From Lepidodermella squamata (lineage: Eukaryota; Animalia; Gastrotricha): DNA of 64,000 nucleotides. The notes under the pieces were generated by a model that worked only from the letters and a program-made list of their open reading frames with translations, did no database searches and was not told where the DNA came from. The stretch covers positions 171,583-235,582 of the forward strand of contig JBLDXI010000057.1 of NCBI GenBank assembly GCA_047495785.1, read 5' to 3'. The position numbers and the translations under genes are program-made. The first letter of the stretch is position 1. Each line of letters begins with the position of its first letter. Of the stretch, positions 36,261 to 64,000 are shown in pieces.

Positions 36261-36285
36261 GGTTAGGGTTAGGGTTGGGTTAGGT
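36199..36285 (+). repeat. Telomeric tract capping A and priming B
   Basis: About 14 TTAGGG units with a few variants. Confidence 0.97.
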
Positions 36286-36289
36286 TAAT

Positions 36290-36331
36290 TACCAGACGGG
36301 AAGCCTAAGCAACCCCGGCATAGAAGCTCTA
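36290..36331 (-). other. Conserved structured element adjacent to the telomere-priming tract (B1)
   Basis: TACCAGACRGGWAGCCTAAGCAACCCCGGCA..RGCTCTA is shared by B, C and D (also at 42463, 47187, 53076, 60594, 62387) while the flanks diverge. Confidence 0.75.
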
Positions 36332-36575
36332 GCAATCCCTTTCACTCTTTTGACGGTAATAAAAACGTTTTGCGTACCTGTCAATCCGTTGATTAGCACC
36401 AGTTGAGATTATTTCAAACAATTTCAATAATTTCCTAAGAAAGAGATTAAATATAATTGAATGTTTGAACATGAATAAGTGTTCTCAAGTCGAGGGTCAC
36501 TGTAGAACCATAAATCCAGGTTCAATCAAAGGAGACCTTGAATGAACCGGGATCATAAATGTAGAATTGAAAATG

Positions 36576-37130
36576 TGGTAGAACCATGTCTTAAGGTTAA
36601 ACCAGAAGGAAGAAGAAGACCTTGGTTGAACCAAAACCATAAAGTTGAGGTTGCAAATACGGGTAGAACCATAACTTAAGGTTGAACCGAAAAGGAAACC
36701 TTAATTGAACCAAAACTATGAAGTTGAGGTTGCAGATATGGGTAGAACCGTAATTTTAAGGTTAAACCGAAAAGGAAACCTTAACTGAACCAGAACTATA
36801 TAGTTAAGGTTGCAAATATGGGTAGAACCATAACTTAAGGTTAAACCGAGAAGGAAACCTTAATTGAACCAAAACTATATAGTTAAGGTTGCAAATATGG
36901 GTAGAACCATAACTTAAGGTTAAACCGAGAAGGAAACCTTAATTGAACCAAAACCATAAAGTTGAGGTTGTAAATATGGGTAAAACCATAATTTAAGGTT
37001 AAACCGAAAAGGAAACCTTAAACTGAACCAGAACTATAAAGTTGAGGTTGCAAATATGGGTAGAACCATAACTTAAGGTTAAACCGAGAAGGAAACCTTA
37101 ATTGAACCAAAACTGTGAAGTTAAGGTTAC
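36576..37130. repeat. About 80-bp tandem repeat (~7 units) in the family B UTR; second copy at about 42749-43303
   Basis: Repeated unit GGTAGAACCATAACTTAAGGTTAAACCGAAAAGGAAACCTTAATTGAACC... Confidence 0.9.
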
Positions 37131-37177
37131 CGTTCCGTTTTTCAAAGGAGAAAAAGGAGAAAAAACCGTAACAATAC

Positions 37178-37319
37178 GCCACCCATGAAGGGGAGCAAAG
37201 AATCAAAGGCCACCCGTATAGGGGAGCGGAAGGAGGCACGCCACCCGTAAAGGGGAGCAACAAAGCAATAGCCACCCATGAAGGGGAGCAATAATTAAAA
37301 GCCACCCGTAAAGGGGAGC
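37178..37319 (-). repeat. Short-hairpin array (GCCACCC-N4-GGGGAGC type) x5, family B
   Basis: About 31-nt periodicity; copy in B2 at +6173. Confidence 0.85.
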
Positions 37320-37420
37320 ATACGGAGAAAGAGCTCAACGTAAAGGTGAGCAAACTGGAAACAACGCCCAGCCGGGTTACCAGACAGTATTGGTAAGAAC
37401 AGGAGGTCAAAAGCACGCAA

Positions 37421-37474
37421 CGCCCATATTAGTCAGACCGGTTTCGCCTGTGGGCAGCAGGCTCGTCAGTGACT
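37421..37474 (-). ncRNA. Type I hammerhead ribozyme with putative loop-II pseudoknot (B1)
   Basis: AGUCA-CUGACGA-GCCUG(CUGCCCA)CAGGC-GAAA-CCGG-UC/UGACU..UGGGCG. Confidence 0.93.
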
Positions 37475-37526
37475 TTGTTGCGAAAATTAAATTTTGCGAA
37501 ATGACGAAAAGTCAGATCTTAAAGCC

Positions 37527-37582
37527 TTTATAAAGGGCTGTTATCTGGACGCCATTTTGAATTTTCAAAATTTGGCGCGAAA
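37527..37582 (-). promoter_or_regulatory. Putative Pol II promoter (E2F-like site, YY1-like site, TATA) upstream of the hammerhead, B1
   Basis: On the - strand: TTTCGCGCCAAA, AAAATGGCG, TTTATAAA. The same order and similar spacing occur in C and D. Confidence 0.6.
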
Positions 37583-38190
37583 GTTTGAGATTTATTTTCC
37601 CAAAATAATGTTATTTCCTGATTGGTAATCATGTGAGGGGTATAACTGGAGTGTTTCACGTAAAAAATGTTCAATTAATTGCCGCATGTTTTTCAAGGTC
37701 GTTGCCATTTGTGGTATCTAGTAAGTTTGCCTAACATGTTTGGTATCAGGTGACCGGTTACGGTTGTGGGTCCAAGTCCAGGAAAACCAAAACCTTGGTT
37801 TTTTGGGTTCTGTTATGGTTTTTATACATTTAAGGTTCATAGGTTTTTGGTGCAGTAACCCAAACTTTAACGTTAAGGTTATGGTTGACGTTATGGTGTT
37901 TTTCAGAATTATGGTTCTAGTTCCGTATCACACCAATTCCCAGTTTACGGTTCGATTTCTCATCTGTAATGTGTCACCAGGGTTGGGTTGCAACCATAAT
38001 TTTCGGTTTTTTTCGGTTGTTGGAGTTGTATGCCGTTTTGCAGGTTCGGTTTTTATGGTTTCACAAGTCGATTTTTTACAAAAGCGATCCACATTTTATT
38101 TCAGAGTTCCTTACCAGGTGGTTTAGAGAAAAACAAAAACACACCATAGCATCGTTACAAACATATTCACTGGAGGTAAGGTTGAGTCAC

Positions 38191-39269
38191 TTAAACTTTT
38201 TTGAGGAAATGGTTGATCAATTCCTCACGGCGTTTGAGCAGCGCCGTTACTTGGTCCATCAGAAGTGGGTGCGTTTCACGGAAATGCGTTGTCAAGCCAT
38301 CACGACGACCGGACCAGGGGGGCGAGCAACCCCTAACGAGGCAGGTCAGTTTCTTTTCACCCGTTTTATCGAAAAGCAATCGATCTTTCCAATCTGGGTC
38401 GTTCTTCAAATGAGCGAAGGCTTTAAGCTCGGCTAGATAGCGCGCCGAGCCTCCGGTAGGGCGTTTCGCAGAGCCCGGGGTGGTTTGAGAGGTCCCCGGC
38501 ACCGATGCCGGTGTTGTCAATGGCCGTTCTATCGAAGTAACAAAAGTAATTTGTGGAAAAGGTGAGAGAACCAGTCACTTACTTGATTTGAGGGCATCGA
38601 GGAATGTATTCTTGCATTCCAACTGTCTTTTCCGCGGTAGTGGCGTGATAATCGGCATACGTTCGACGAGAACCGCTGCCACCATCGGCTGTGTTTGTTC
38701 AGCCATACCGTTGGTTGTTTCGCCCGATGGTTCTTCATCCGCGGTGTCCTTATCGCTCTCGAGCGTAGTCGTAATTTCGACTACCGCAGATTGTTCAGCT
38801 TCGTCTTCCTCGCTGGATGTTTCGAACCCTCCAACATCGTCCGCTTCGCTGATCGTACGTGCTCCAAGGAGGTCGTTGAAGGCACGTTCGGACATGAGGT
38901 CCGCGACATCAGTGTCGGCCAAGTGACCGGCACCTGAAGTTCCAGCCAGATCCATCGGTGTTGCAGGTCGGTTAACCTCCGGTTCCAAAACCGGTGGCGG
39001 AGCAGCAGTGTCCTCAACTCGGCTGGCCGCGGGGGGTCCGCTTTCAACCAGTTGCGTAGCTGTAGACGGGCCAGCGCTGTCATCAAACTGACTAGATGAA
39101 GCCGCATCTATTCCGACGGCAGTTGTTCTGTGTTGGCATGGCAATGGCGGAGGGCGACTAGGGCGGCCAATGGTGACATTTTGAGGTAAGGGACCGCGCC
39201 ATTGATCCGTTCCAGCCCAACGTTTTGGGTCCGTGACCAAGCCTAGGCCAAAGTCCCAGTTGGGCCAAT
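38191..39269 (-). CDS. Family B downstream exons (38583-39269, 38191-38528): acidic disordered region plus C2H2 zinc finger
   Basis: Intron 38529-38582 (GTAAGT..AG) joins the two ORFs in frame; CLVRGC-x13-HFRETH. There is no ATG of its own; the region begins at a TTTTAG acceptor. Confidence 0.82.
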
Positions 39270-39448
39270 CTAAAATTAACTCACGAGTAAAGTGTTTGGG
39301 GAAATGATATGTTGCTGTTTCAATTTATTTACAACCAAAACTTAGGTCACGAGTCATAGTCAAAAGTGTCAATTATCACTTGTATTGTCTTGGAATCCGT
39401 TTGTTGTTGTTGTAGTTGTTGTAGATTAGCCTGTAAACGAACTTATAA

Positions 39449-42341
39449 TTAACCTATAAATTCAGACTTAGTGTATCTTTTTCTGTTGTTTTTGTTTAGT
39501 TTCAGAGCCAGTCGTCCTTTCTGACGAATTAGCGCGTAAGCAGGTTCCAGTGTTTTTACGTATGTTACTACGTTCACCGTTTCATACTTCTGCTTTTTGC
39601 TTTTGGCTTTGATAAATGGCCAAGGGGTGCCTTTCAGTTTCCTCAAGGTATTTTTGATTGTGCTAATTATGAGTGCCCAGGGGTAATCCCTTTTGAGGAG
39701 GCTGTAGCAGAGGGAAAGAGTGGCCGTGGCCCAATCTTCGAAGTTTGAGCAGATTCTGCTATATCGGAGAATTTGGGACTCAATGATGCCTGAAAAAATG
39801 TGGTCAGGGTGCTCCGAGCCATGACATAGAAGTGCCATGTTATCGGTCGGTTTAAAGTAAACCCCTGTTTCGATTTTACCATTTTTCTTATACAGAAAAA
39901 TGTCCAAGTATTGAGCAGACTTATCTGAGATATTCACCTCAAGTTTAATGTTTGGGTGAAGGGTCTTATAGTCCTCCAAGAAGGCTGATGAGCGGTGATT
40001 GTCGAGGAAGATAGTAATTAGATCATCGAGGTATCTACACCCCAGTGGTGGGGAGTAAATTACCCAAAGGTTTCTTTCCTTTATGAAAAGCCAATTGTTA
40101 GCCACCCAGGGGGATAGGTGACCCCCCATAGCTAGTCCTTGTATTTGACGATACCATTTATTGTTGAACTTCACCGTGCTAGAGCTAAGGACGAGGAATA
40201 TAGCTCGGCAGACGAGCCGTCTCTCGTCGTATTCGAGGACTTCAAATTCCCTAAGGTAGGCCGCGATTCCATCTACAGCCTCGTGGAGGGGAATTTGGTT
40301 GTACATGTCGGTAATGTCCGCTGTGGTGATGACTGCATTTCGCAAGTCCTTTCCACTAGCGTTCAAATCCCTGATCTTTTGTAGGACCTCCACGCTACTA
40401 TGTACAACCGTGGTGAGGGTGTGCCTAGCTTGCCGGAGATTCCTGTAGAGGGTTTTATCGGCTTGCGAAGTATAGGTGTTGGTGCCATCGGTAATTGGGC
40501 GGACTTTGAGTAAATTTTCGTTGTCTGGGGGCTTGTGTAATTTTGGTAAGAAGTAGATGTATTTTGTGCGTATCCTGTCTATCTTTTTGAAAAGGCCTTT
40601 CCAGTTTTTCAAAGTATTTGGTGATAGGATGACCCAAGATGATCTTAGCCTGTGTAGGGCGTTTCTGTATTCCGCTAAGCCATCATCGTTGACTTCGCGA
40701 AAAGTTTGGGCATTCTGGAGAAATTTTTCCCCCATGCGACAGTAGGTTATTTTGTTGATTGCAATGACTACATTTCCCTTGTCGCTTTTCGTTACCCAGG
40801 TTCCCTCGGGGACTGTAAGTTCCTCGTTGTCAACTTTAGATAATTCACGCTCAAAAGAATAGAATAGATCACGGCGGGATTTTCGAGTCAAGTTGATTTT
40901 CAATTCCACAAATTTCTTTTCAACATCAAGTAACGTTTTTCTCATGTCTTTCCTATTGACTTTTACGAATTGGAGTCCTTTGGAGAGGGCTTCCTTGAGA
41001 TTGGTTGGCAGTTTCTCTGTTAGATCTATAACCCCTCGTTTTTCCCATTTTTTATTCTCTGCAGAAAGCGAAAGGGCTGGTTGAGAGGAAGTATGAATTG
41101 GTAGCCTATTGGAGAGTGAACTCTCTGATCCAAAAATAGATGATGAAAGGCCCGGGAGATCTTCAAGTATAAGCAGATCCTGGAGGTGACAGTCTATCAG
41201 ATGCCTCCAAAGTTTCCTTTTATTAGTTATATTGGTTGAATGTTCGTTACAGGTGGTGGTAATTATTCCATTGTTCTCAGAGGATGAGATACTACGATTC
41301 GGGTGACCCGGTTCGAATTTAGATGTAAAGAACCATAAAGAGGGTTTGGAAAATAGTGCGTTGATGAGAGTTTTGGTGTTGCATGTTTCTCCAAAAAGGT
41401 TTTCCTCGTGTAGAGTTTCCCAAGTGATTGGTTTGATAATATTAGGAACAGAAATTCTCCTACCTGAACTGACTGTAATGCCAGGGGCAGTCAGGGGTGC
41501 AGTCGGTGTTCCGCCAGTACTGAGCTCAACAGACAACTTTTCATCAATCAAGTGAAGAATGGTTTGAAAGCGTGCGGGTGGATCCGATGGCAGCGTCGTC
41601 CAATCTTGAGCAAGCATTGCCTTTGCGGCACGGCAAATTGCAGCTGCATCCAAGGTTTTGCCTTGTGTTTGCGGTGCGGTGATTAGAGGGAACGGTTTCC
41701 AGTTGAGAAGTATATCGGTTTGAAATGTGAGACTTGAACGATCTGCGGAGCGCCATGAAGACAGTATGGCATCATCGATTGAGCCACGGATGGAGGTCGA
41801 CGCTGATTCATAAATCGGCTTCAAGTCCAGCCACTTTTCAGCAGTGGAAGCCATGGACGCGACGATTTTCAAGCGTTCCTGTTCCGCCACGGCACGAATA
41901 GACACTTCAATTGTATCGTTCACCAGTCCTGGCCACTTTATGAACGCGTGGCACATCATGGCCTCCGCAAGCTAAGGATAAGACAGAATATTAGGTTATT
42001 TTCGATATTAAGGGGGTTAAGTGACTTACTTGTCGAACCACTGTGTTACCGGGGCTGAGGCCCGCAGACTTGGCTTTGTACCCGGCCATCATATTAAAGG
42101 TGGTGATGGCCATTGGCCAAAACGAGTTCAGGACATTAAGTGCTTGTTCGATAAGATCACCACCAGTGCGATTTGACGGTTGCCAGGAACTAAAAGCGGC
42201 ATGGAGAACGTTGGCGACGTCGTTGTTTTGGTCGACCCTAGGTTCATCTGCTTTGTTTCCCCCGTTATGAAATCGTTTAACGGGACCGCCGCGACCGTGA
42301 CCATTGTTGTTCCGATTACGATGGTTATTTGGCATACTCAT
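39449..42341 (-). CDS. Family B RT polyprotein (944 aa after removing intron 41972-42029), no endonuclease
   Basis: YFLPKLHKP, VRPITDG, TADITDMYNQIP, QIQGLAMGG, RYLDDL, GVYFKPTDN..SEHP. The spliced junction VVRQ/LAEAMMC aligns with uninterrupted family C AVRDIAKIVC. Confidence 0.93.
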
Positions 42342-43593
42342 TTCTAGGAAGAGAATGTAAAATATTAGGATGGCTTAGAGGTGTGTGATGAGGGACCGTC
42401 TCAGAGTTAGGGGATCGCCGTACTCACGACACGAGCCAGTGTTAGGGTTGGGTTAGGTTAATTACCAGACGGGAAGCCTAAGCAACCCCGGCATAGAAGC
42501 TCTAGCAATCCCTTTCACTCTTTTGACGGTAATAAAAACGTTTTGCGTACCTGTCAATCCGTTGATTAGCACCAGTTGAGATTATTTCAAACAATTTCAA
42601 TAATTTCCTAAGAAAGAGATTAAATATAATTGAATGTTTGAACATGAATAAGTGTTCTCAAGTCGAGGGTCACTGTAGAACCATAAATCCAGGTTCAATC
42701 AAAGGAGACCTTGAATGAACCGGGATCATAAATGTAGAATTGAAAATGTGGTAGAACCATGTCTTAAGGTTAAACCAGAAGGAAGAAGAAGACCTTGGTT
42801 GAACCAAAACCATAAAGTTGAGGTTGCAAATACGGGTAGAACCATAACTTAAGGTTGAACCGAAAAGGAAACCTTAATTGAACCAAAACTATGAAGTTGA
42901 GGTTGCAGATATGGGTAGAACCGTAATTTTAAGGTTAAACCGAAAAGGAAACCTTAACTGAACCAGAACTATATAGTTAAGGTTGCAAATATGGGTAGAA
43001 CCATAACTTAAGGTTAAACCGAGAAGGAAACCTTAATTGAACCAAAACTATATAGTTAAGGTTGCAAATATGGGTAGAACCATAACTTAAGGTTAAACCG
43101 AGAAGGAAACCTTAATTGAACCAAAACCATAAAGTTGAGGTTGTAAATATGGGTAAAACCATAATTTAAGGTTAAACCGAAAAGGAAACCTTAAACTGAA
43201 CCAGAACTATAAAGTTGAGGTTGCAAATATGGGTAGAACCATAACTTAAGGTTAAACCGAGAAGGAAACCTTAATTGAACCAAAACTGTGAAGTTAAGGT
43301 TACCGTTCCGTTTTTCAAAGGAGAAAAAGGAGAAAAAACCGTAACAATACGCCACCCATGAAGGGGAGCAAAGAATCAAAGGCCACCCGTATAGGGGAGC
43401 GGAAGGAGGCACGCCACCCGTAAAGGGGAGCAACAAAGCAATAGCCACCCATGAAGGGGAGCAATAATTAAAAGCCACCCGTAAAGGGGAGCATACGGAG
43501 AAAGAGCTCAACGTAAAGGTGAGCAAACTGGAAACAACGCCCAGCCGGGTTACCAGACAGTATTGGTGAGAACAGGAGGTCAAAAGCACGCAA

Positions 43594-43647
43594 CGCCCAT
43601 ATTAGTCAGACCGGTTTCGCCTGTGGGCAGCAGGCTCGTCAGTGACT
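43594..43647 (-). ncRNA. Hammerhead ribozyme (B2)
   Basis: Same sequence as 37421-37474. Confidence 0.93.
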
Positions 43648-44363
43648 TTGTTGCGAAAATTAAATTTTGCGAAATGACGAAAAGTCAGATCTTAAAGCCT
43701 TTATAAAGGGCTGTTATCTGGACGCCATTTTGAATTTTCAAAATTTGGCGCGAAAGTTTGAGATTTATTTTCCCAAAATAATGTTATTTCCTGATTGGTA
43801 ATCATGTGAGGGGTATAACTGGAGTGTTTCACGTAAAAAATGTTCAATTAATTGCCGCATGTTTTTCAAGGTCGTTGCCATTTGTGGTATCTAGTAAGTT
43901 TGCCTAACATGTTTGGTATCAGGTGACCGGTTACGGTTGTGGGTCCAAGTCCAGGAAAACCAAAACCTTGGTTTTTTGGGTTCTGTTATGGTTTTTATAC
44001 ATTTAAGGTTCATAGGTTTTTGGTGCAGTAACCCAAACTTTAACGTTAAGGTTATGGTTGACGTTATGGTGTTTTTCAGAATTATGGTTCTAGTTCCGTA
44101 TCACACCAATTCCCAGTTTACGGTTCGATTTCTCATCTGTAATGTGTCACCAGGGTTGGGTTGCAACCATAATTTTCGGTTTTTTTCGGTTGTTGGAGTT
44201 GTATGCCGTTTTGCAGGTTCGGTTTTTATGGTTTCACAAGTCGATTTTTTACAAAAGCGATCCACATTTTATTTCAGAGTTCCTTACCAGGTGGTTTAGA
44301 GAAAAACAAAAACACACCATAACATCGTTACAAACATACTCACTGGAGGTAAGGTTGAGTCAC

Positions 44364-45442
44364 TTAAACTTTTTTGAGGAAATGGTTGATCAATTCCTCA
44401 CGGCGTTTGAGCAGCGCCGTTACTTGGTCCATCAGAAGTGGGTGCGTTTCACGGAAATGCGTTGTCAAGCCATCACGACGACCGGACCAGGGGGGCGAGC
44501 AACCCCTAACGAGGCAGGTCAGTTTCTTTTCACCCGTTTTATCGAAAAGCAATCGATCTTTCCAATCTGGGTCGTTCTTCAAATGAGCGAAGGCTTTAAG
44601 CTCGGCTAGATAGCGCGCCGAGCCTCCGGTAGGGCGTTTCGCAGAGCCCGGGGTGGTTTGAGAGGTCCCCGGCACCGATGCCGGTGTTGTCAATGGCCGT
44701 TCTATCGAAGTAACAAAAGTAATTTGTGGAAAAGGTGAGAGAACCAGTCACTTACTTGATTTGAGGGCATCGAGGAATGTATTCTTGCATTCCAACTGTC
44801 TTTTCCGCGGTAGTGGCGTGATAATCGGCATACGTTCGACGAGAACCGCTGCCACCATCGGCTGTGTTTGTTCAGCCATACCGTTGGTTGTTTCGCCCGA
44901 TGGTTCTTCATCCGCGGTGTCCTTATCGCTCTCGAGCGTAGTCGTAATTTCGACTACCGCAGATTGTTCAGCTTCGTCTTCCTCGCTGGATGTTTCGAAC
45001 CCTCCAACATCGTCCGCTTCGCTGATCGTACGTGCTCCAAGGAGGTCGTTGAAGGCACGTTCGGACATGAGGTCCGCGACATCAGTGTCGGCCAAGTGAC
45101 CGGCACCTGAAGTTCCAGCCAGATCCATCGGTGTTGCAGGTCGGTTAACCTCCGGTTCCAAAACCGGTGGCGGAGCAGCAGTGTCCTCAACTCGGCTGGC
45201 CGCGGGGGGTCCGCTTTCAACCAGTTGCGTAGCTGTAGACGGGCCAGCGCTGTCATCAAACTGACTAGATGAAGCCGCATCTATTCCGACGGCAGTTGTT
45301 CTGTGTTGGCATGGCAATGGCGGAGGGCGACTAGGGCGGCCAATGGTGACATTTTGAGGTAAGGGACCGCGCCATTGATCCGTTCCAGCCCAACGTTTTG
45401 GGTCCGTGACCAAGCCTAGGCCAAAGTCCCAGTTGGGCCAAT
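44364..45442 (-). CDS. Family B downstream ZnF exons, copy in B2 (orphaned from their upstream exons)
   Basis: Duplicate of 38191-39269 at +6173. Confidence 0.7.
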
Positions 45443-45621
45443 CTAAAATTAACTCACGAGTAAAGTGTTTGGGGAAATGATATGTTGCTGTTTCAATTTA
45501 TTTACAACCAAAACTTAGGTCACGAGTCATAGTCAAAAGTGTCAATTATCACTTGTATTGTCTTGGAATCCGTTTGTTGTTGTTGTAGTTGTTGTAGATT
45601 AGCCTGTAAACGAACTTATAA

Positions 45622-47060: not shown

Positions 47061-47092
47061 GGTTAGGGTTAGGGTTAGGGTTAGGGTTAGGG

Positions 47093-47133
<41 letters not shown>

Positions 47134-47182
47134 GGTTAGGGTTAGGGTTAGGGTTAGGGTTAGGGTTAGGGTTAGGTTAGGG
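47060..47182 (+). repeat. Telomeric tract capping B and priming C
   Basis: About 20 TTAGGG units. Confidence 0.97.
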
Positions 47183-47948: not shown

Positions 47949-48017
47949 ACCCGATAAATTAGTTGCGGAGCGGTATGCGGTGTAATAACCTAATGTAATA
48001 CGAGAGATAGTAAGCAA

Positions 48018-53906: not shown

Positions 53907-53959
53907 CGCCCATAGTGCCAGACCGGTTTCGCCTGTGGGCGGCAGGCTCGTCAGTGACT
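53907..53959 (-). ncRNA. Hammerhead ribozyme (C2)
   Basis: Same sequence as in C1. Confidence 0.92.
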
Positions 53960-54693
53960 CTAGTTGCTTAAAACAAAATCCGCTCAAATGATGAAAATGT
54001 TCGAAAATAAGGCTTTTTATACTGCGGTCCCTTCCGCCATTTTGGAAAAAATCGTGGCACGTGGGTTTTGGCGCGAAAATTTTTCTAGAAACTGATGTTA
54101 TTTCCATAACCCAGTGCTAGTGGTTAGCTTATTTCCAACGGTTGAAACGTTTTGGAATTTATTAGCCGCAGGTGATTTCAAGGTCGTTTAGCCGCAGGTG
54201 ATAGACTTAGAGTTAAGGTTTCATACTTATGGTTCGAGTTAAGGTTTCATACTTATGGTTCGCCTAGTCTTAGTGTTGGCGGTCTTCTGACCACAAGTTA
54301 AATAACCGGCCGAATAGTCGTTTTAGGGTTGTCCTCGATAAGATAAGGTTCTTTTCAGTTCCGCTATTTGTTCAAGTCCCAAAACCTTAAGTTCTGGTTT
54401 CACACCGTAAGGTGGATTTAAGGTTACAGATATTCGTTAGTTTATTTCCACCTTCCTGAAGTGGATTTAAGGTTAGGGTCCTGTAGTTCGATTTCAATTT
54501 CCACGTTGATTCAGGTTGCCCAACCTTAAGTTGTTACTTAAGGTTACGGTTTCTGATTATCTTCGGACCCATTTGTTTCTGTTTCATTCTGCCTGGAGTT
54601 AAGGTTCACACGGTTGTAAAAGTCGTGAATTAGTTCAACAATGTGTTTTATTTCAGAAACTTCATCACTCACACTCACTTGACACAAATCACC

Positions 54694-55871
54694 TCAAAAG
54701 TCACCCTTCTTCAGGATCTCAGCGCGGAGACGAAGACGTTCTTCATCCAGTGCTTGGGCCTGGACTAGCTGGTCTTTCTCGTGGTTCTTCAAGAAGTGTC
54801 CAAGTAGACCGTCCGACCTAGTGCAAGTGAACTTGCAGGATCCAATTCGGCAGAGGATGATCGATCCAGGCTTTTTGCCCGGGACCCGGGGAGCTTGCTC
54901 CACCCGTTCCCAGACAAGGGCGCCCTCGTAGTTCTCGCGCAGTTTTTCCCATGCAAGACTTTCGGCGACAGATCTAGCGGAACCTCCCGCAAGTCTCCGA
55001 CCAGAAGTCGTGGGTCCACGGGCTGGAGTGCTGGCGATAGAGAATGAACAACCACCGGTCGATGACGACGAGCGTTCTGTGACAAGGTAAAGTTGAAGTT
55101 AAGGTTGCAATCTCCTTTAAAGAAATATCTTACCTTCCAAAGACGGAAGTGGTCGCTTGCGATTCGCCCTGTTGACTGTAGGCTCCGATGTCGAAGCCAT
55201 GGACACATTGTAGCGGGGTGCTGGCGATGAGGCTGCCGAACTCGTGGCGCTGCTGAATTCCAGTGGGGTTGAGGTTGCGCCTCCTCTCAGAGGTCGTCCG
55301 AACATATCGATATCTATGAAAAGATCGCGATCGAGGCGGACAACACAATCCTTAGTCGACAATCTCGGGTCTGGAGTTCCCAGGGTCGCATCCGGCTGAA
55401 GTGTTGATTCCGAGGATGAGCTTTCACTATCTGAGCGTGAAAGCGCATCACGTGTCTCTTCGGGCAGCTCGTCCGCTGACATTTCAATAGCATCCTCGGT
55501 AGCCGATCTCACCGGAGAATCGGTTATCACGATGACGCCGCCCTGCTCCCGTTCCGGTGCTGCGTTGCTGGTAGCGGTTCCACCGTTATCCTGGTCAGGC
55601 TTGGGATCTGCGTTGACTTGCTCGGTATCGTCGTCCAGCAGGTCAAGGGCTTCCTGGAGGGTAGCCGAGTCCGCGGCAGAGAAGCTACCCAAGCCGCTGA
55701 AAGTAGAAGCGCAAATTTCGGGACCATTGCTCGTCGATGGCAGCTCGAGCCTGTGACCAATGGTGACGGGCGAGGGGCACGGAGCCCTCCAGGCCGACTC
55801 AGGAGCCCAGCGACCGGTATCGTAGGTTGTCCCGAAGTTGAAGAATCTCCAACTCGGTGAAGCCGTGTCAG
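54694..55871 (-). CDS. Family C downstream ZnF exons, copy in C2
   Basis: Duplicate of 48805-49982 at +5889. Confidence 0.75.
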
Positions 55872-56040
55872 CTGGAAATGTTGTTATAGGGTTACGGGTA
55901 TAAAGAAAAGGGTAAAAAGGCAAGTAAATTTGCACCAACTGTTTTATTTCTCACAAATGTTAGTATCATGGTGGATCATCGTCAAATGTCATTGTTCAGG
56001 GCCATAGTTGCGTTGAATGATGTCTTGTGTTGTTGTTTCT

Positions 56041-58718
56041 TTAGCTCTGACCTAGAAATTCAGATTTAGTGAAACGTTTACGATTATTTTTATTAAGACG
56101 AAGGGCCATTTTTCCTTTCCTTCGGATCAGGCTGTATGCGGGTTGAAGTGCTTTAGCATAGTGTAAAACGTGCATTGTCTCGTAATTTTTCTTTTTCTGC
56201 CGGTTGTTGTTGATAAAGGGCCACGTCTTTCCCTCCAATTTTGACAAAGTGCTTTTTGTGACTTTTGAGAGTAGAGTCCAAGAGTACCCCCGTTTAACCA
56301 AGCTGTTGAAAAGGGAGAGCGTTGCATACGCCCAGTCTGAGAACGTTGAGGCAATTCTGCTGAAGCGTAGAATTTGGGATTCAATGACACCACTGAAAAT
56401 GTGCTCTGGGTGCTCTGATCCATAACTGAGCAAGGCGAGGTTATCAGTAGGTTTGAAGTAGACGCCCGTCTCTAGCCTACCCTGTTTTTTATAGATAACC
56501 ATATCCAAGTATTGGCCACTAGTCTGGGAAGAGGACACTTCAAGTTTGATATTTGGGTGCAGTTTTTTGTAATCTTCTTCAAAAGATGATGATCTTTGGT
56601 TGCTGAGAAAAATCGTGAGGAGGTCATCGAGGTAACGGCAACCGAGGGGTGGTGAATAGATAAGCCAGAGTTTTCTTTCCAAGATGAATAACCAGTTATT
56701 AGCCACCCATGGGGAGAGATGGCCCCCCATTGCCAACCCTTGGATCTGTTGGTACCATTTGTTGTTAAATTTCACCCTGCTGGAGCATAGTACGAGGTAA
56801 ATAGCTTTGCATACTAATCTTCGTTCTTCAGGCTCGAAAACTTCATATTCCCGCAGATAAATTGCCACACCGTCCACCGCCTCCTTTAGGGGTATCTGGT
56901 TGTACATATCGCTGATGTCAGCAGTCATGATGACCGCTTCATCCAAGTTCCGACCACTTTCATTCAGTTCCCTGATTTTCTGTAAGACCTCTGTGCTGCT
57001 ATGCACAACAGTTGTGAGGGTATGCCTAGCCCTGCGCAGTTTTTTGTAGAGTGTTTTGTCGGCTTGGGAGGTGTAGGTATTAGTACCATCTGTGATGGGT
57101 CGAACCTTAAGTAGCCCTTCCTCGTCCGGGGCCTTATGGAGTTTCGGGAGAAAGTAAATAAATTTCGAGCGAAGTTTTTGTTGTCTTACAAAGATCCCTT
57201 TCCATTTCCTCAGTGTGCCAGGGGAAATTTGTAGCCATGATGATTTTAATTGAGACAAAGCCTCTCGATATCCCGCGAAGCCGTCATCCTCAACAACTCG
57301 AAAATTAGTTGCGTTGTTCAAAAATTTTTCACCCATACGACAATAGGTGCTCTTGTCTAGAGCTAAAGTGACGTTACCTTTGTCACTTTTAGTGATCCAA
57401 ACGTTCGGTCCTAGTTCTGGGGTTTTATTCTCAAGGCGCGTCATTTCTATGGCGGTCCCGGCGTGTAATTCCCTTCGGGATCTCCTGCTCAGCTGAATGC
57501 CCAGTTCCTTAAATTTTTCCTCCACTTCCTGGAGGGATTTTTGAAGATCTTTTTTGGTCAGTTTGACAAATTGAAATCCCTTCGCTAGGGTTGCCTTAAC
57601 CTCTTCAGATAAACTATTAGTAAGGTCAACAACACCTTTTTTCTCCCAGATCTTGTTTTCCTCGGAAAGATTGAGGGCTGGTTGCCTAGAGCTGTGAATC
57701 GGTAGGTTACCCGGGACGATACAGTTTTCACCGTACAAGGATTTAGTGAATGAAGGGAAATCCTCCATGACGAAGAGGTCGTATATGTGGCAATCTACAA
57801 GGTGTTTCCATAACTTCCCGGGTGCAGAGAAAGTGGAGCGGTGTTTACTACAAGAGACAGTGAACCCGTCTGAATTTTCTGAAGTCAGGCAATTGCTGGG
57901 GTGCCCCGGTTCCCAACGGGCTGAGAAATGCCACACCGAGGGTTCCGTGAAAAGCTGTTTTATAACAACTCCAACCCTACACAAAGTTTTATTACCCATC
58001 AAGTTATCCAAGTATCCCCAAGTAATGTCCTTGATTCCGCTAGGAGTAAAAACAATTTTCCTACCTGAGGCTCCAGAGGCTCCTGCCTGTGGAGCAGTCG
58101 GCAGCCCGCCATTGGTGAGCTCCAAGCCCAGTTTTTCATCAACCAGATGTACCAATGTGCGCAATCTGACTGCTTTGTCGCCTCCAACTCCATTCCAATC
58201 ATGGGCAATGACGGCCTGCGTTGCACGGCAGATCCCGGACTTGTCGAGCGTTTTACCAGCATTGCGGGGTGCGGCAATGAGAGGGAACGGCTGCCAAGTC
58301 ACTGTGAAGTCCGCGCTGATACCAAGCCCTTCTTTATCGGCGGCCCTGTAAGTCGCCGCGAGAGCGTCATCCAGCGCTGCCTTGACCGGAGGTGTCGCAG
58401 ACTCGTAGATCTCCTTGAGACTTAACCATTTCTCAGCTGCTCTGGCGAGGTTAACCGTAATTTTTAATCGTAGCTTCTCTCCCACCAGTTTCAGCGACAG
58501 GTCGACCGCCTCATTGGCCAGTGGTTCGTAATCCAAGATGTCGTTGTCGCAAACGATCTTCGCGATGTCGCGAACTGCCGGGTCAGACAGAGGAGATAGA
58601 CTCAAAACTTTGGTCTTGTAGCCATCCATTTCCTTGAACACGCGGAACGTTTGACGCCAAAAATCATTGAATAGTTGCGTAGCGCGTTCAGTCGAGTCGC
58701 CGCCGGTTCGGTTCGTCG
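56041..58718 (-). pseudogene. Family C RT ORF in C2 lacking its first ~52 codons
   Basis: Matches C1 up to 58718, where the inversion junction removes the ATG. Confidence 0.85.
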
Positions 58719-58721
58719 TCC

Positions 58722-60390
58722 ACGAGCTGCCCGAAGAGACACGTGATGCGCTTTCACGCTCAGATAGTGAAAGCTCATCCTCGGAATCAACACTTCAGCC
58801 GGATGCGACCCTGGGAACTCCAGACCCGAGATTGTCGACTAAGGATTGTGTTGTCCGCCTCGATCGCGATCTTTTCATAGATATCGATATGTTCGGACGA
58901 CCTCTGAGAGGAGGCGCAACCTCAACCCCACTGGAATTCAGCAGCGCCACGAGTTCGGCAGCCTCATCGCCAGCACCCCGCTACAATGTGTCCATGGCTT
59001 CGACATCGGAGCCTACAGTCAACAGGGCGAATCGCAAGCGACCACTTCCGTCTTTGGAAGGTAAGATATTTCTTTAAAGGAGATTGCAACCTTAACTTCA
59101 ACTTTACCTTGTCACAGAACGCTCGTCGTCATCGACCGGTGGTTGTTCATTCTCTATCGCCAGCACTCCAGCCCGTGGACCCACGACTTCTGGTCGGAGA
59201 CTTGCGGGAGGTTCCGCTAGATCTGTCGCCGAAAGTCTTGCATGGGAAAAACTGCGCGAGAACTACGAGGGCGCCCTTGTCTGGGAACGGGTGGAGCAAG
59301 CTCCCCGGGTCCCGGGCAAAAAGCCTGGATCGATCATCCTCTGCCGAATTGGATCCTGCAAGTTCACTTGCACTAGGTCGGACGGTCTACTTGGACACTT
59401 CTTGAAGAACCACGAGAAAGACCAGCTAGTCCAGGCCCAAGCACTGGATGAAGAACGTCTTCGTCTCCGCGCTGAGATCCTGAAGAAGGGTGACTTTTGA
59501 GGTGATTTGTGTCAAGTGAGTGTGAGTGATGAAGTTTCTGAAATAAAACACATTGTTGAACTAATTCACGACTTTTACAACCGTGTGAACCTTAACTCCA
59601 GGCAGAATGAAACAGAAACAAATGGGTCCGAAGATAATCAGAAACCGTAACCTTAAGTAACAACTTAAGGTTGGGCAACCTGAATCAACGTGGAAATTGA
59701 AATCGAACTACAGGACCCTAACCTTAAATCCACTTCAGGAAGGTGGAAATAAACTAACGAATATCTGTAACCTTAAATCCACCTTACGGTGTGAAACCAG
59801 AACTTAAGGTTTTGGGACTTGAACAAATAGCGGAACTGAAAAGAACCTTATCTTATCGAGGACAACCCTAAAACGACTATTCGGCCGGTTATTTAACTTG
59901 TGGTCAGAAGACCGCCAACACTAAGACTAGGCGAACCATAAGTATGAAACCTTAACTCGAACCATAAGTATGAAACCTTAACTCTAAGTCTATCACCTGC
60001 GGCTAAACGACCTTGAAATCACCTGCGGCTAATAAATTCCAAAACGTTTCAACCGTTGGAAATAAGCTAACCACTAGCACTGGGTTATGGAAATAACATC
60101 AGTTTCTAGAAAAATTTTCGCGCCAAAACCCACGTGCCACGATTTTTTCCAAAATGGCGGAAGGGACCGCAGTATAAAAAGCCTTATTTTCGAACATTTT
60201 CATCATTTGAGCGGATTTTGTTTTAAGCAACTAGAGTCACTGACGAGCCTGCCGCCCACAGGCGAAACCGGTCTGGCACTATGGGCGTTGCTTACTATCT
60301 CTCGTATTACATTAGGTTATTACACCGCATACCGCTCCGCAACTAATTTATCGGGTGCTTCCCTCCACGGGTGGCTTAGCTTCCCTCTAA
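58722..60390 (+). mobile_element. Inverted fragment of family C (reverse complement of about 47915-49583)
   Basis: The same ORFs appear on the opposite strand; includes the ZnF exon, promoter block and hammerhead; capped by telomeric repeats. Confidence 0.93.
60235..60287 (+). ncRNA. Hammerhead ribozyme in the inverted C fragment
   Basis: AGTCACTGACGAGCCTGCCGCCCACAGGCGAAACCGGTCTGGCACTATGGGCG. Confidence 0.92.
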
Positions 60391-60582
60391 GGGTTTGGGT
60401 TAGAGTTAGGGTTAGGGTTGGGTTAGGGTTAGGGTTAGGGTTAGGGTTAGGGTTAGGGTTAGGGTTAGGGTTAGGGTTAGGGTTAGGGTTAGGGTTAGGG
60501 TTAGGGTTAGGGTTAGGGTTAGGGTTAGGGTTAGGGTTAGGGTTAGGGTTAGGGTTAGGGTTAGGGTTAGGGTTAGGGTTAG
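60391..60582 (+). repeat. Telomeric tract (about 32 units, first few variant)
   Basis: GGGTTTGGGTTAGAGTTAGGG... followed by regular TTAGGG. Confidence 0.97.
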
Positions 60583-61129
60583 TTTAGGGAAAATACCAGA
60601 CAGGTAGCCTAAGCAACCCCGGCAAGGAGGCTCTAGTGCAGCCCAGCTCAAATAAAATACCGTAATCCTTGATCGAGGCTTAGAGGAGGTTCAGTATTGG
60701 TTGAACTGTGGTATCAACAGTTCCGTAGAGTAGACAAGGGTCTTTCAATGTATGTAAACAGATCATCTCCAGGTTGAGGTTCCCGAACCCTAAGTGGTTC
60801 AAGCTCAGACAAAAATGGCGTGTGCACCATAACTCAGTCAGAGGAACGCCTGTTCAGGATCAGCGCTCCTTTCGTTGGGAAATCGTCACCCGAGAGCACG
60901 CCAGGAAGAGCGACACCCGAACCTTAAGTAACCCTGTAGCATTTCACAGATTACTCCCGGTCCATCCTGCAACCTAAGCCAAGGATGACATTCCAGAAGC
61001 TCAAGTTATTCCAAAAGGTGAACCCTAACTGATGTTGGGCTCGATTTGTGATCTCCCTGTGTCTGAGATCACGATGACCCCCAAGTTATTTAGGGTTGGA
61101 AGGCTTGAAGTCATCCTGCAAGCTGAGAT

Positions 61130-61276
61130 GCCACCCTAGTAGCGGGAAGCGTAATTCCAGATGCCACCCATTGGAGGGAAGCCAACAACGCAATGCCACC
61201 CATTAGAGGGAAGCCAATATCACAATGCCACCCTTGCGGGAAGCCTTTTTCGCCTTGCCACCCGTAAAGGGAAGCA
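61130..61276 (-). repeat. Short-hairpin array x5, family D
   Basis: GCCACCC-N4/7-GGGAAGC; copy at +1793. Confidence 0.85.
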
Positions 61277-61370
61277 CTTGGTAATGTGGTGGAAAAGAGC
61301 AGTACTCGACAATTGCGATTGTCGCATATTCCTAGGAAAAGTAGGAAATAAAGTTATTGATGTCAAGCAA

Positions 61371-61423
61371 CGCCCATAGTGTCAGACCGGTTTCGCCTGT
61401 GGGCAGCAGGCTCATCAGTGACT
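61371..61423 (-). ncRNA. Hammerhead ribozyme (D1)
   Basis: GUCA-CUGAUGA-GCCUG(CUGCCCA)CAGGC-GAAA-CCGG-UC/UGAC..UGGGCG. Confidence 0.93.
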
Positions 61424-61478
61424 CTAGTTGCTTAGACCAAAATCCGCTCGAATGAAGAAAACGCTCCGAAATACGGCC

Positions 61479-61539
61479 TTATATACCGCGATCTCTTCCG
61501 CTATTACAACATACGTGCCACGTGGCTTTGGCGCGAAAA
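61479..61539 (-). promoter_or_regulatory. Putative promoter (E2F-like, E-box, TATA), D1
   Basis: On the - strand: TTTTCGCGCCAAA, CACGTG, TATATAA. Confidence 0.58.
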
Positions 61540-63163
61540 CCCTTTCTGCCATCTGATACAATTCTCGTAATATACGGTTAGAGGTTAGCTTATTTCCAAG
61601 AGTTGACATGCTTTGGAATTAATTAGCCGCAGGTGACAGACTTAGAGTTAAGGTTCCCTACTTGGGGTATTACAAAACCAGGTTTGGCGCTTTAGGGTTA
61701 AGGTTAAGGTTCGCTGTTCTCTGATCATGCTTTTATTAACACAACTTATCTAGTTAGTTAAGGTCATCTCGTTTAGCATTTGGAGAAATTCGATCTGTTG
61801 TTGTTCATCATATCCCTTGAAGTGTCTTATCTCTGTCGCGTGATGAGACATCTAATCTTCGAACTCTAAGGTTCATACACATAGATGACAGGTCAAGAGG
61901 CCCTACCTTTGCTACAACAAGCTTGTAAAATATCTTGTTACCGATACGGGGAAGCTGAAACAGCCGTTGAGTATGGAGTGAATCCATACCAGTCACAATT
62001 CCCTGTGCGTACACAGTCATTACTTCGTTCATGATCGTAATGAGTTTTAAGGTCACACTATGGGTTGTTCCCGGGATTTTGATATCAACAAACCATAAAT
62101 GCAACGCAAACTCAGGCCACTACTTATCCACATATGGATTACATGAGAGAATTGATGACTGCCACTGACTAGCTAGTGTCCTAATTGTTCATCCCATATC
62201 GATCGATATAAATAGGGTAAATACAACCCGAAGAGGCTCCATGTCATCGAAGTAAACCGAGTATGATTGAGTTCTGATGGAGGATTGTTAACGAAACGAC
62301 CATTAAGTTGGTCAGGTATAATAAATGAGCCAAACTGACACCGCACGTACGGCACAAGCAAATTGTTAGGGTTAGTTTAGGGAAAATACCAGACAGGTAG
62401 CCTAAGCAACCCCGGCAAGGAGGCTCTAGTGCAGCCCAGCTCAAATAAAATACCGTAATCCTTGATCGAGGCTTAGAGGAGGTTCAGTATTGGTTGAACT
62501 GTGGTATCAACAGTTCCGTAGAGTAGACAAGGGTCTTTCAATGTATGTAAACAGATCATCTCCAGGTTGAGGTTCCCGAACCCTAAGTGGTTCAAGCTCA
62601 GACAAAAATGGCGTGTGCACCATAACTCAGTCAGAGGAACGCCTGTTCAGGATCAGCGCTCCTTTCGTTGGGAAATCGTCACCCGAGAGCACGCCAGGAA
62701 GAGCGACACCCGAACCTTAAGTAACCCTGTAGCATTTCACAGATTACTCCCGGTCCATCCTGCAACCTAAGCCAAGGATGACATTCCAGAAGCTCAAGTT
62801 ATTCCAAAAGGTGAACCCTAACTGATGTTGGGCTCGATTTGTGATCTCCCTGTGTCTGAGATCACGATGACCCCCAAGTTATTTAGGGTTGGAAGGCTTG
62901 AAGTCATCCTGCAAGCTGAGATGCCACCCTAGTAGCGGGAAGCGTAATTCCAGATGCCACCCATTGGAGGGAAGCCAACAACGCAATGCCACCCATTAGA
63001 GGGAAGCCAATATCACAATGCCACCCTTGCGGGAAGCCTTTTTCGCCTTGCCACCCGTAAAGGGAAGCACTTGGTAATGTGGTGGAAAAGAGCAGTACTC
63101 GACAATTGCGATTGTCGCATATTCCTAGGAAAAGTAGGAAATAAAGTTATTGATGTCAAGCAA

Positions 63164-63216
63164 CGCCCATAGTGTCAGACCGGTTTCGCCTGTGGGCAGC
63201 AGGCTCATCAGTGACT
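63164..63216 (-). ncRNA. Hammerhead ribozyme (D2)
   Basis: Same sequence as in D1. Confidence 0.93.
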
Positions 63217-64000
63217 CTAGTTGCTTAGACCAAAATCCGCTCGAATGAAGAAAACGCTCCGAAATACGGCCTTATATACCGCGATCTCTTCCGCTATTAC
63301 AACATACGTGCCACGTGGCTTTGGCGCGAAAACCCTTTCTGCCATCTGATACAATTCTCGTAATATACGGTTAGAGGTTAGCTTATTTCCAAGAGTTGAC
63401 ATGCTTTGGAATTAATTAGCCGCAGGTGACAGACTTAGAGTTAAGGTTCCCTACTTGGGGTATTACAAAACCAGGTTTGGCGCTTTAGGGTTAAGGTTAA
63501 GGTTCGCTGTTCTCTGATCATGCTTTTATTAACACAACTTATCTAGTTAGTTAAGGTCATCTCGTTTAGCATTTGGAGAAATTCGATCTGTTGTTGTTCA
63601 TCATATCCCTTGAAGTGTCTTATCTCTGTCGCGTGATGAGACATCTAATCTTCGAACTCTAAGGTTCATACACATAGATGACAGGTCAAGAGGCCCTACC
63701 TTTGCTACAACAAGCTTGTAAAATATCTTGTTACCGATACGGGGAAGCTGAAACAGCCGTTGAGTATGGAGTGAATCCATACCAGTCACAATTCCCTGTG
63801 CGTACACAGTCATTACTTCGTTCATGATCGTAATGAGTTTTAAGGTCACACTATGGGTTGTTCCCGGGATTTTGATATCAACAAACCATAAATGCAACGC
63901 AAACTCAGGCCACTACTTATCCACATATGGATTACATGAGAGAATTGATGACTGCCACTGACTAGCTAGTGTCCTAATTGTTCATCCCACTCTCACGAGA

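What the first reader, a model, noticed from the sequence alone, without database searches (positions are those of the whole stretch)
36268..63989. All four insertions are seamless partial tandems of more than one unit, consistent with rolling-circle reverse transcription
Seen: lengths of about 1.26 (A), 1.75 (B), 1.96 (C) and 1.9 (D) units. The internal junctions (42441, 53054, 62365) contain only the element's own 2-3 variant repeats and no added telomere. Each unit has one hammerhead, which in B/C/D lies 0.8-1.2 kb from the priming tract. Known: hammerhead-bearing retrozymes yield unit-length circular RNAs, and PLEs often form partial tandems. Inference: cleavage at successive hammerheads releases a monomer that circularises and is copied past one turn. 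This also places the promoter of one unit upstream of the ORF of the next.
Basis: inference. Interest (0 to 1): 0.78.

Follow-up and report, generated by a model that had tools for sequence, protein, structure and literature searches.

The report
Telomere-primed Penelope-like retroelements in partial tandems
Four endonuclease-lacking Penelope-like retroelements are stacked on a chromosome end, each as a seamless copy of between one and two units; this layout is known for such elements, and the DNA cannot show whether the RNA template was a circle.

Summary
The tandems are real. Lengths are 1.256 units (A, outside the stated range), 1.749 (B), 1.962 (C) and 1.906 (D). Repeated parts are 99.9-100% identical. 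Each internal junction holds only the element's own variant telomere-like tract.

A type I hammerhead with a one-pair helix III and a CCGG loop occurs once per unit in B, C and D, about 0.8-1.15 kb from the tract. No hammerhead was found in A, which is still a partial tandem.

The ORFs are Penelope-like reverse transcriptases without a GIY-YIG endonuclease. The nearest named relatives are bdelloid rotifer proteins at 27% identity.

Partial tandems plus an inverted 5' copy are standard for these elements. The idea of hammerhead cleavage, circular RNA and more-than-unit copying was published in 2014. An in-vitro study of 2024 instead favours internal initiation on linear multi-copy RNA, with the hammerhead dispensable.

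The sequence shows only that the template ran unbroken across the tract. I slightly prefer a linear more-than-unit RNA (0.45) over a hammerhead-made circle (0.25). This is a new member of a known kind with some variant features.

The parts
30133..30168 (+). telomeric G-strand tract on which insertion A was primed
30159..36198 (-). insertion A: 1.256 units of a 4810-nt element (RNA sense is the - strand); no hammerhead found
34966..34990 (-). A internal junction: the element's own variant telomere-like tract, lying in frame inside ORF1
33826..35931 (-). A ORF1 (701 codons), open across the internal junction
32154..33893 (-). A reverse transcriptase ORF (579 aa), overlapping ORF1 in another frame
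36199..36284 (+). telomere tract capping A and priming B
36265..47060 (-). insertion B: 1.749 units of a 6173-nt element
42438..42462 (-). B internal junction tract (three variant repeats)
39449..41959 (-). B reverse transcriptase ORF (836 aa); the N-terminal piece at 42278-42018 is in another frame
37400..37500 (-). B hammerhead, proximal unit (core 37442-37469; predicted cleavage between 37436 and 37435)
43573..43673 (-). B hammerhead, distal partial unit
47059..47182 (+). telomere tract capping B and priming C
47165..58718 (-). insertion C, direct part: 1.962 units of a 5889-nt element
53054..53071 (-). C internal junction tract
50152..52986 (-). C ORF (944 aa) with zinc-finger-like motif and Penelope-like reverse transcriptase; no endonuclease domain
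47997..48097 (-). C hammerhead, proximal unit (core 48038-48065)
53886..53986 (-). C hammerhead, distal unit
58722..60394 (+). inverted copy of C unit positions 746-2419, joined by 3 extra bases at 58719-58721; carries a third C hammerhead at 60208-60308
60390..60582 (+). telomere tract (about 32 repeats, irregular at its start) capping C and priming D
60572..63989 (-). insertion D: 1.906 units of a 1793-nt element with no long ORF. It shares with C the 3' 70 nt, the hammerhead region, 32-nt repeats and the last 39 nt
62365..62382 (-). D internal junction tract
61350..61450 (-). D hammerhead, proximal unit (core 61391-61418)
63143..63243 (-). D hammerhead, distal unit

Best explanation
These are endonuclease-lacking Penelope-like retroelements of three autonomous families (A, B, C) plus one non-coding derivative (D), added one after another to a chromosome end.

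Shown by the sequence: each insertion starts exactly where perfect TTAGGG repeats meet a short variant tract coded by the element. All ORFs point toward the centromere. The distal ends of A, B and C are re-capped by telomere repeats. This fits extension of the telomeric 3' overhang after it pairs with a complementary tract in the element RNA.

Also shown: the template ran unbroken through that tract, because a complete unit is joined seamlessly to the next tract.

Inferred, and my preferred reading: the template was a linear RNA longer than one unit, either a multi-copy or a read-through transcript of an existing tandem or head-to-tail array. Synthesis started at the tract as an initiation site, as shown in vitro for the anole element PAc. 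It then stopped or switched template within the second unit. In this reading the hammerhead is an accessory RNA-processing motif and does not cause the tandem.
For: - Anatomy and orientation.
- Element-coded tract: identical at terminal and internal copies, and shared by C and D.
- Primer/cDNA boundary: visible as single differences at 36267/42440 and 47176/53065.
- Penelope-like reverse transcriptase: DKG, PKLHK, RPI and YxDD-type motifs are shared by A, B, C and database relatives. No GIY-YIG domain was found. The nearest named relatives are Rotaria socialis proteins. Metagenome relatives carry a hammerhead followed by a short C-rich tract, as published for rotifer Athena (PMC6431247).
- Continuous template: a block of about 65 nt, the tract and about 35 nt is conserved across the junction in B, C and D. 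In A, a 701-codon ORF is open only in one frame on both sides of the junction.
- Against a need for the hammerhead: A is a tandem without one. Naiad elements lack hammerheads yet form partial tandems (PMC8557442). PAc hammerhead mutants insert normally, unprocessed multi-copy RNA is the main substrate and initiation is internal (PMC11167929).
- Template switching: C changes to an inverted copy through 3 extra bases.
Against: A linear template of 1.96 units needs a source array of at least two units plus an upstream promoter, and none of the four copies here qualifies. Progeny of copies shorter than two units should shrink with each generation, unless transcription enters from the distal neighbour.

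Under a single memoryless stopping rule, the chance that all four lengths fall between one and two units is at most 0.004. A two-regime model fits more easily, with easy synthesis in the first turn and harder strand displacement afterwards, and that suits a circle. The hammerhead is kept intact in the non-coding derivative D and is of the dimer type, which suggests a role in propagation. No RNA data were available.
Confidence: 0.45

Rival explanations
1. A transcript holding two hammerheads is cut at both, the dimer-type ribozymes pairing through their ACCGGU segment. The unit-length RNA is ligated into a circle. The telomeric overhang pairs with the single tract on the circle, and the reverse transcriptase runs past one turn.
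For: B, C and D each hold two hammerheads in direct order around a complete unit. All core nucleotides are invariant across three diverged families, with one compensatory pair in helix I. The non-coding D keeps the hammerhead. A circle explains how copies shorter than two units can regenerate more-than-unit progeny. It also explains why stops cluster in the second turn if strand displacement is inefficient. The model was published as a hypothesis (PMC4209133), and small animal retrozymes with type I hammerheads do exist as circular RNA (PMC7229834).
Against: A has the same architecture with no detectable hammerhead. No insertion exceeds two units, not even the 1.8-kb D, although the same class of enzyme copied 11.6 kb in C. 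The inverted segment in C is not a rolling product. For PAc, the hammerhead is dispensable in vitro and no RNA-seq reads end at the cleavage site (PMC11167929). None of the papers read here reports a circular RNA of about 6 kb made by a minimal hammerhead.
Confidence: 0.25
2. Template jumping. A unit-length linear RNA is copied to its 5' end at the junction. The cDNA end is then handed to the tract of a second RNA, perhaps held by the second subunit of a dimeric enzyme. This would give at most about two units.
For: The enzyme demonstrably switches template in C, adding 3 extra bases. In B and C the ORF starts 68 nt and about 140 nt downstream of the junction, so a unit-length mRNA starting at the junction is plausible. 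PAc is predicted to be a dimer (PMC11167929). A two-template complex would explain the limit of one to two units.
Against: In A, an RNA starting at the junction would begin in mid-ORF. The conserved block spans both sides of the junction as one module, and a predicted stem pairs the two sides, with three compensatory pairs but only three sequences. None of the four junctions carries extra bases, unlike the switch seen in C.
Confidence: 0.12
3. The lengths are not primary products. Longer arrays were collapsed by the assembler to one loop traversal, or single-unit insertions were duplicated later by unequal exchange or break-induced replication at the chromosome end.
For: Collapse of an array of n.x units to 1.x is the typical assembly outcome, and it would by itself produce lengths between one and two units in every case. 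A, D and the internal part of C have no differences between copies, so reads could not tell the copies apart.
Against: B's copies differ at three internal positions and were kept apart. Partial tandems of this kind are the documented norm for Penelope-like elements in many assemblies (PMC8557442, PMC13159263). Later duplication would not place the repeat boundary exactly at the priming tract in four unrelated cases.
Confidence: 0.08

Closest known systems
Athena elements and Terminons of bdelloid rotifers (endonuclease-lacking Penelope-like elements)
   Same: No endonuclease. The 3' end carries a short reverse-complement telomeric tract joined to G-strand repeats. 5' ends are capped by telomere repeats. 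Elements form head-to-tail arrays at chromosome ends and carry a type I hammerhead. ORF1 and the reverse transcriptase ORF lie in different frames in A. The nearest named proteins come from a bdelloid.
   Different: Identity is only 27%. The telomere repeat is TTAGGG, not the rotifer type. In Athena, and in the metagenome relatives fetched here, the hammerhead lies immediately upstream of the tract (PMC6431247). Here it is 0.8-1.15 kb away, separated by tandem repeats, and A has none. There are no giant accessory gene sets.
Coprina elements (fungi, diatoms, clubmoss, shrimp)
   Same: Endonuclease-lacking, found at TTAGGG-type telomeres and flanked by telomere repeats on both sides. Direct terminal repeats are reported for Coprina-1_Alen (PMC13159263).
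   Different: Placement in the reverse transcriptase tree was not tested here. The host genes in this window (a P4-ATPase and ORFs with weak Cys-loop channel matches) and the dimer-type minimal hammerhead point to an animal. Fungal and protist Penelope-like elements are reported to carry hammerheads that are stable as monomers (PMC4209133).
Canonical endonuclease-bearing Penelope-like elements (Penelope, Poseidon/PAc, Naiad)
   Same: A full copy is preceded by a 5'-truncated copy (pseudo-LTR), often with an inverted 5'-truncated copy next to it, exactly as in C (PMC8557442). In PAc the ORF start lies upstream of the internal initiation site (PMC11167929), as in A.
   Different: No GIY-YIG domain. 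Priming uses a natural chromosome end instead of a nick. The initiation site here is complementary to its primer, whereas PAc starts at a site with no homology to the target.
Animal non-LTR retrozymes
   Same: D is a non-coding unit with one type I hammerhead and shares cis elements with an autonomous Penelope-like element. [quoted passage not shown]
   Different: D is 1793 nt, far longer than the small circular RNAs the retrozyme paper reports (PMC7229834; the few-hundred-nt size is from my own knowledge). It is targeted to a telomere and sits in a copy of fewer than two units, not a long array. Circular RNA was not tested.
HeT-A/TART telomeric retrotransposons of Drosophila
   Same: Head-to-tail arrays at chromosome ends. 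In HeT-A a promoter in the 3' end of one element drives its downstream neighbour (established knowledge, not tested here).
   Different: They are non-LTR (LINE-like) elements with poly(A) ends, have no hammerhead and occur in a host without telomerase repeats.

Membership tests
Penelope-like elements (reverse transcriptase) | Reverse transcriptase with the family's conserved motifs (DKG block upstream of the core, YxDD-type active site, thumb) | tested here: met
   Alignment A2: the DKG, PKLHK, RPI, ADISDMY, AMG and RYLDD-type blocks are shared by A, B, C and five database relatives. Pfam RVT_1 is weak, at 20-30 bits.
Penelope-like elements (reverse transcriptase) | Placement inside the Penelope-like clade, sister to telomerase, in a reverse transcriptase tree | not tested
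   No reference set of named sequences was available. A profile search of solved structures gave only weak generic reverse transcriptase hits, with telomerase at E about 0.05.
Endonuclease-lacking telomeric Penelope-like elements (Athena/Coprina) | No GIY-YIG endonuclease domain | tested here: met
   No Pfam match in any ORF of 150 aa or more in the elements. The reverse transcriptase ORFs end shortly after the thumb.
Endonuclease-lacking telomeric Penelope-like elements (Athena/Coprina) | 3' end carries a short reverse-complement telomeric tract joined to G-strand repeats, with the 5' end facing the chromosome end and capped by repeats | tested here: met
   Met for A, B and C. D's cap lies outside the window.
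Endonuclease-lacking telomeric Penelope-like elements (Athena/Coprina) | Hammerhead immediately next to the 3' tract | tested here: not met
   The distance is about 800-1150 nt in B, C and D, and A has none. In the metagenome relatives the tract follows within a few tens of bases.
Pseudo-LTR / partial tandem architecture of Penelope-like elements | A full unit preceded by a 5'-truncated unit in direct order, optionally with an inverted 5'-truncated copy | tested here: met
Hammerhead ribozyme, minimal type I (Penelope-like variant) | Conserved core (CUGANGA, GAAA, cleavage triplet), helices I and II, and a 1-2 pair helix III with a palindromic loop | tested here: met
   All 16 proposed pairs form in all three families, with one compensatory pair and one wobble change. 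The CCGG loop is present.
Hammerhead ribozyme, minimal type I (Penelope-like variant) | Score above the curated threshold of an Rfam hammerhead model | tested here: not met
   Best scores are 12.5-21.6 bits against gathering scores of 48.5-56.
Hammerhead ribozyme, minimal type I (Penelope-like variant) | Self-cleavage | not testable with these tools
   Needs an in-vitro assay on monomer and dimer constructs. The lowest-energy fold of a single copy is not the active fold, as expected for dimer-type motifs.
Rolling-circle reverse transcription of a circular RNA | Products of more than two units, or longer than any genomic source array | tested here: not met
   All four lie between 1.26 and 1.96 units. 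Only this window could be examined.
Rolling-circle reverse transcription of a circular RNA | Unit-length circular RNA | not testable with these tools
   No RNA data were available.
Animal non-LTR retrozymes (for D) | Non-coding repeat unit with one type I hammerhead, mobilised in trans | tested here: inconclusive
   D's longest ORF is 74 codons. D shares its 3' 70 nt (96%), its hammerhead region (80%) and its last 39 nt (90%) with C. Its unit is much longer than the small circular RNAs described for retrozymes.

The most novel reading that the evidence does not exclude
B and C, at 5.9-6.2 kb and protein-coding, and their 1.8-kb derivative D may replicate through hammerhead-processed circular RNAs. 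These circles would be copied in rolling-circle fashion from the telomeric overhang. That would make them autonomous, gene-carrying counterparts of retrozymes. A tract held in a hairpin by an internal mimic of the telomeric G strand would serve as the origin of cDNA synthesis.
Probability: 0.25. Interest if true: 0.8.

Novelty: new member of a known kind. Interest (0 to 1): 0.4.

Why it matters
How Penelope-like elements make their partial tandem and inverted copies is an open question. The field has suggested that the endonuclease is responsible (PMC8557442). This locus shows the full pattern in elements without an endonuclease: a complete unit, a truncated direct copy and an inverted 5' copy. 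The primer (the telomeric overhang) and the start point are known to within a few bases. This points to the reverse transcriptase and its RNA template as the source of the pattern.

The locus also holds families with and without a hammerhead side by side. That gives a natural contrast for testing whether the ribozyme has any part in tandem formation. The elements themselves are ordinary members of a known class, and the proposed mechanism is a published hypothesis that the DNA alone cannot settle.

Tried and rejected
- Rfam at gathering thresholds found nothing in the window.
- The first protein word search drew its words from the non-conserved N-terminus and found nothing. Repeating it on residues 480-944 worked.
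- A word search with a host channel ORF, meant to identify the organism, found nothing. The taxon stays unknown.
The contigs of the closest relatives (51%, 44% and 33% identity) could therefore not be fetched to look for tandems, hammerheads or the junction-spanning ORF.
- Sequence searches of solved structures were uninformative.
- The loose hammerhead-like match in A at 31142-31171, and a + strand match at 31468, were rejected.
- Successive independent insertions of the same element were rejected as the cause of the tandems, because there are no added repeats and the proximal unit is not truncated.
- One processivity-limited stopping rule was rejected as the explanation of the lengths (P at most 0.004). 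This does not separate a circle from other two-regime models.
- BLASTP found no similarity between A ORF1 and the C ORF. Only a short N-terminal motif looks alike.
- The 2007 and 2017 primary papers on Athena and Terminons are not held in the library, so their content is cited through later papers.
- The large representative protein search and structure prediction were not used, because no claim here rests on them.

Full report
**What is there**

The + strand carries perfect TTAGGG tracts at 30133-30168, 36199-36284, 47059-47182 and 60390-60582. It is therefore the telomeric G strand, and the chromosome end lies to the right. A self-comparison shows that each tract is followed by a head-to-tail partial tandem:

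| Insertion | Coordinates | Period (nt) | Units | Mismatches between copies |
|---|---|---|---|---|
| A | 30159-36198 | 4810 | 1.256 | 0 in 1230 |
| B | 36265-47060 | 6173 | 1.749 | 4 in 4623 |
| C | 47165-58718 | 5889 | 1.962 | 1 in 5665 |
| D | 60572-63989 | 1793 | 1.906 | 0 in 1625 |

A lies left of the stated range.

**Junctions**

Each internal junction (34969, 42438, 53054, 62365) holds only a variant telomere-like tract of about 18-25 nt. The same tract stands at the terminal copy, and C and D share it. The tract is therefore coded by the element.

One of B's four differences (36267/42440) and C's only difference (47176/53065) lie inside the tract. The terminal copy reads like the telomere there. 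These positions probably mark the boundary between primer and cDNA.

**Genes**

All long ORFs are on the - strand. The ORFs at 32154-33893, 39449-41959 and 50152-52986 hit Pfam RVT_1 weakly. They align with each other and with database relatives through the blocks typical of Penelope-like reverse transcriptases, including the DKG block. No GIY-YIG endonuclease was found.

The closest relatives are unnamed proteins from public assemblies (51%, 44% and 33% identity). The closest named ones are Rotaria socialis proteins at 27%. Eighty metagenome loci encode distant relatives. In six of them a hammerhead on the reverse transcriptase strand is followed within a few tens of bases by a short C-rich tract. 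That is the arrangement described for rotifer Athena elements (PMC6431247, PMC8557442).

The left 23 kb of the window holds host ORFs: P4-ATPase pieces and three ORFs with weak, sub-threshold Pfam matches to the Cys-loop channel membrane domain. The host is probably an animal. Its identity could not be found. I do not take the contig for human.

**Hammerheads**

A descriptor scan, an alignment and a covariance model run without filters find the same motif seven times:
- twice in B, on the - strand;
- twice in C, on the - strand;
- once on the + strand, in the inverted C segment;
- twice in D, on the - strand.

The core is invariant. Helix II has five pairs. Helix I has 4 + 6 pairs, with one compensatory change and one wobble change. 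Helix III is a single A-U pair closed by CCGG, so the ACCGGU segment is self-complementary. This is the minimal dimer-type design reported for Penelope-like elements (PMC4209133).

Curated Rfam models reach only 12-22 bits at these sites. Element A has no such motif by any of the three methods. The loose match at 31142-31171 does not hold up.

1. C is followed by a 1673-nt inverted copy of its own positions 746-2419 (58722-60394). It is joined through three extra bases and ends in irregular first telomere repeats. A full unit, a truncated direct unit and an inverted 5'-truncated copy together are the textbook arrangement of Penelope-like insertions (PMC8557442).
2. D is followed by 11 non-telomeric bases at the window end.
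3. In A, a 701-codon ORF (33826-35931) runs through the internal junction. The tract is translated in frame. Both halves are open only in this frame and show the same GC pattern by codon position. Its first residues resemble the N-termini of the B and C ORFs. Joining two halves in frame has about a one-in-three chance by itself. If the ORF is real, A's protein can be encoded only by a template that crosses the junction.
4. In B, C and D a block of about 65 nt, the tract and about 35 nt is conserved across the junction, while the other non-coding sequence is not alignable. The predicted fold pairs the tract with an upstream G-rich segment that mimics the telomeric G strand. An outer stem pairs the two sides of the junction, with three compensatory pairs. 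There are only three sequences, the shuffle controls are weak and the fold z-score is -2.2.
5. D has no long ORF and shares only cis elements with C. It looks like a non-autonomous derivative.
6. The 4-kb segment 26108-30132 is also bounded by telomere repeats but is not a tandem.

**Mechanism**

The shared core is well supported. The telomeric overhang pairs with the tract and the element's reverse transcriptase extends it. The template is continuous through the tract. Synthesis ends or switches within the second unit, and the end is re-capped. Independent successive insertions cannot give a complete proximal unit joined to the next tract with no added repeats.

The topology of the template is the open point. 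A circle, a linear multimer and a precise template jump all give the same DNA.

- Two hammerheads flank a unit in B, C and D.
- The ribozyme is of the dimer type.
- D retains the hammerhead.
- A circle would explain how copies shorter than two units regenerate more-than-unit progeny.
- All four lengths lie between one and two units. One memoryless stopping rule gives this with probability at most 0.004. A model with easy synthesis in the first turn and harder strand displacement afterwards fits more readily.

*Against it:*
- A is a tandem without a hammerhead.
- Naiad elements behave the same way (PMC8557442).
- No insertion exceeds two units, not even the 1.8-kb D.
- The inverted segment shows template switching.
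- For the only Penelope-like enzyme studied in vitro, hammerhead mutants insert normally, unprocessed multi-copy RNA is the main substrate, initiation is internal and no RNA-seq reads end at the cleavage site (PMC11167929).
- Collapse of longer arrays during assembly would also produce the pattern of one to two units, and it cannot be excluded for A, C and D.

My estimates are 0.45 for a linear more-than-unit template, 0.25 for a hammerhead-made circle, 0.12 for template jumping and 0.08 for artefact or later duplication.

**Comparison with what is known**

The locus belongs to the endonuclease-lacking, telomere-attached Penelope-like elements. It differs from Athena in four ways:
- low sequence identity (27% to the nearest named relatives);
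- TTAGGG-type tracts;
- a hammerhead separated from the tract by about 1 kb of tandem repeats (79-nt and 31-32-nt units);
- one family with no hammerhead, whose tract lies inside an ORF.

The rolling-circle idea was proposed in 2014 (PMC4209133).

- Two primary papers are not held in the library.
- The two frames of B's ORF were translated and compared separately.

Noticed in passing
58719-60394: A 1673-nt inverted copy of C unit positions 746-2419 is joined to the direct tandem by 3 extra bases. It includes a third C hammerhead on the + strand and ends in irregular first telomere repeats.
   Followed up: yes
33826-35931 (-): A's 701-codon ORF reads in frame through the internal junction and the telomere-like tract. 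The complete ORF therefore exists only in a copy longer than one unit. Its first residues resemble the N-termini of the B and C ORFs.
   Followed up: partly
36181-36198: The distal end of A consists of two 7-nt C-strand-like repeats directly abutting the G-strand tract. This is a poor substrate for telomerase, and the join is unexplained.
   Followed up: no
26085-30132: A short TTAGGG tract at 26085-26107 is followed by 4 kb with no reverse transcriptase, tandem or hammerhead. Its first 60 nt weakly resemble the 3' module of B, C and D. It may be a fifth insertion that is not a tandem.
   Followed up: partly
42400-42520, 53016-53136, 62327-62447 (-): A conserved block spans the junction. In the predicted fold the tract pairs with an upstream G-rich mimic of the telomeric strand, and an outer stem joins the two sides of the junction. 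Covariation support is weak, with only three sequences.
   Followed up: partly
36577-37353; 47745-47926; 61161-61245: Tandem repeats of 79 nt (7 copies) and 31-32 nt fill the space between hammerhead and tract. The 31-32-nt units of B, C and D share a core motif.
   Followed up: no
42278-42018 versus 41971-39449 (-); 33826-33893: In B, the N-terminal roughly 90 codons homologous to C lie in a different frame from the main ORF. In A, ORF1 and the reverse transcriptase ORF overlap by 68 nt in different frames. ORF1 set apart by a frameshift is described for some Penelope-like elements (PMC8557442).
   Followed up: partly
47176/53065 and 36267/42440: At these single positions the terminal tract reads like the telomere while the internal tract reads like the element. 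They probably mark where the primer ended and cDNA began, and the register differs between insertions.
   Followed up: partly
37442-37469 and the other hammerhead copies: Loop 2 (GCCCA) is complementary to the bulge in helix I (UGGGC) in all three families. This may be a tertiary pseudoknot. In single-copy folds it competes with the active structure.
   Followed up: no
1-23000: Host side: pieces of a P4-ATPase gene (7374-11075, - strand) and three ORFs with weak Cys-loop channel matches sharing 61-77% identical segments near 5.2, 15.6 and 21.9 kb. Two 20-21-nt tandem arrays at 18894-18968 and 19161-19255 are reverse complements of each other.
   Followed up: no
L007:7354-7847 and 12825-13318; L016, L022, L074: Metagenome relatives: L007 has 494-nt direct repeats 5471 nt apart around its reverse transcriptase. 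L016, L022 and L074 each show two successive hammerhead-like motifs, each followed by a short C-rich tract, within 80-300 nt. These look like stacked, heavily 5'-truncated insertions.
   Followed up: partly
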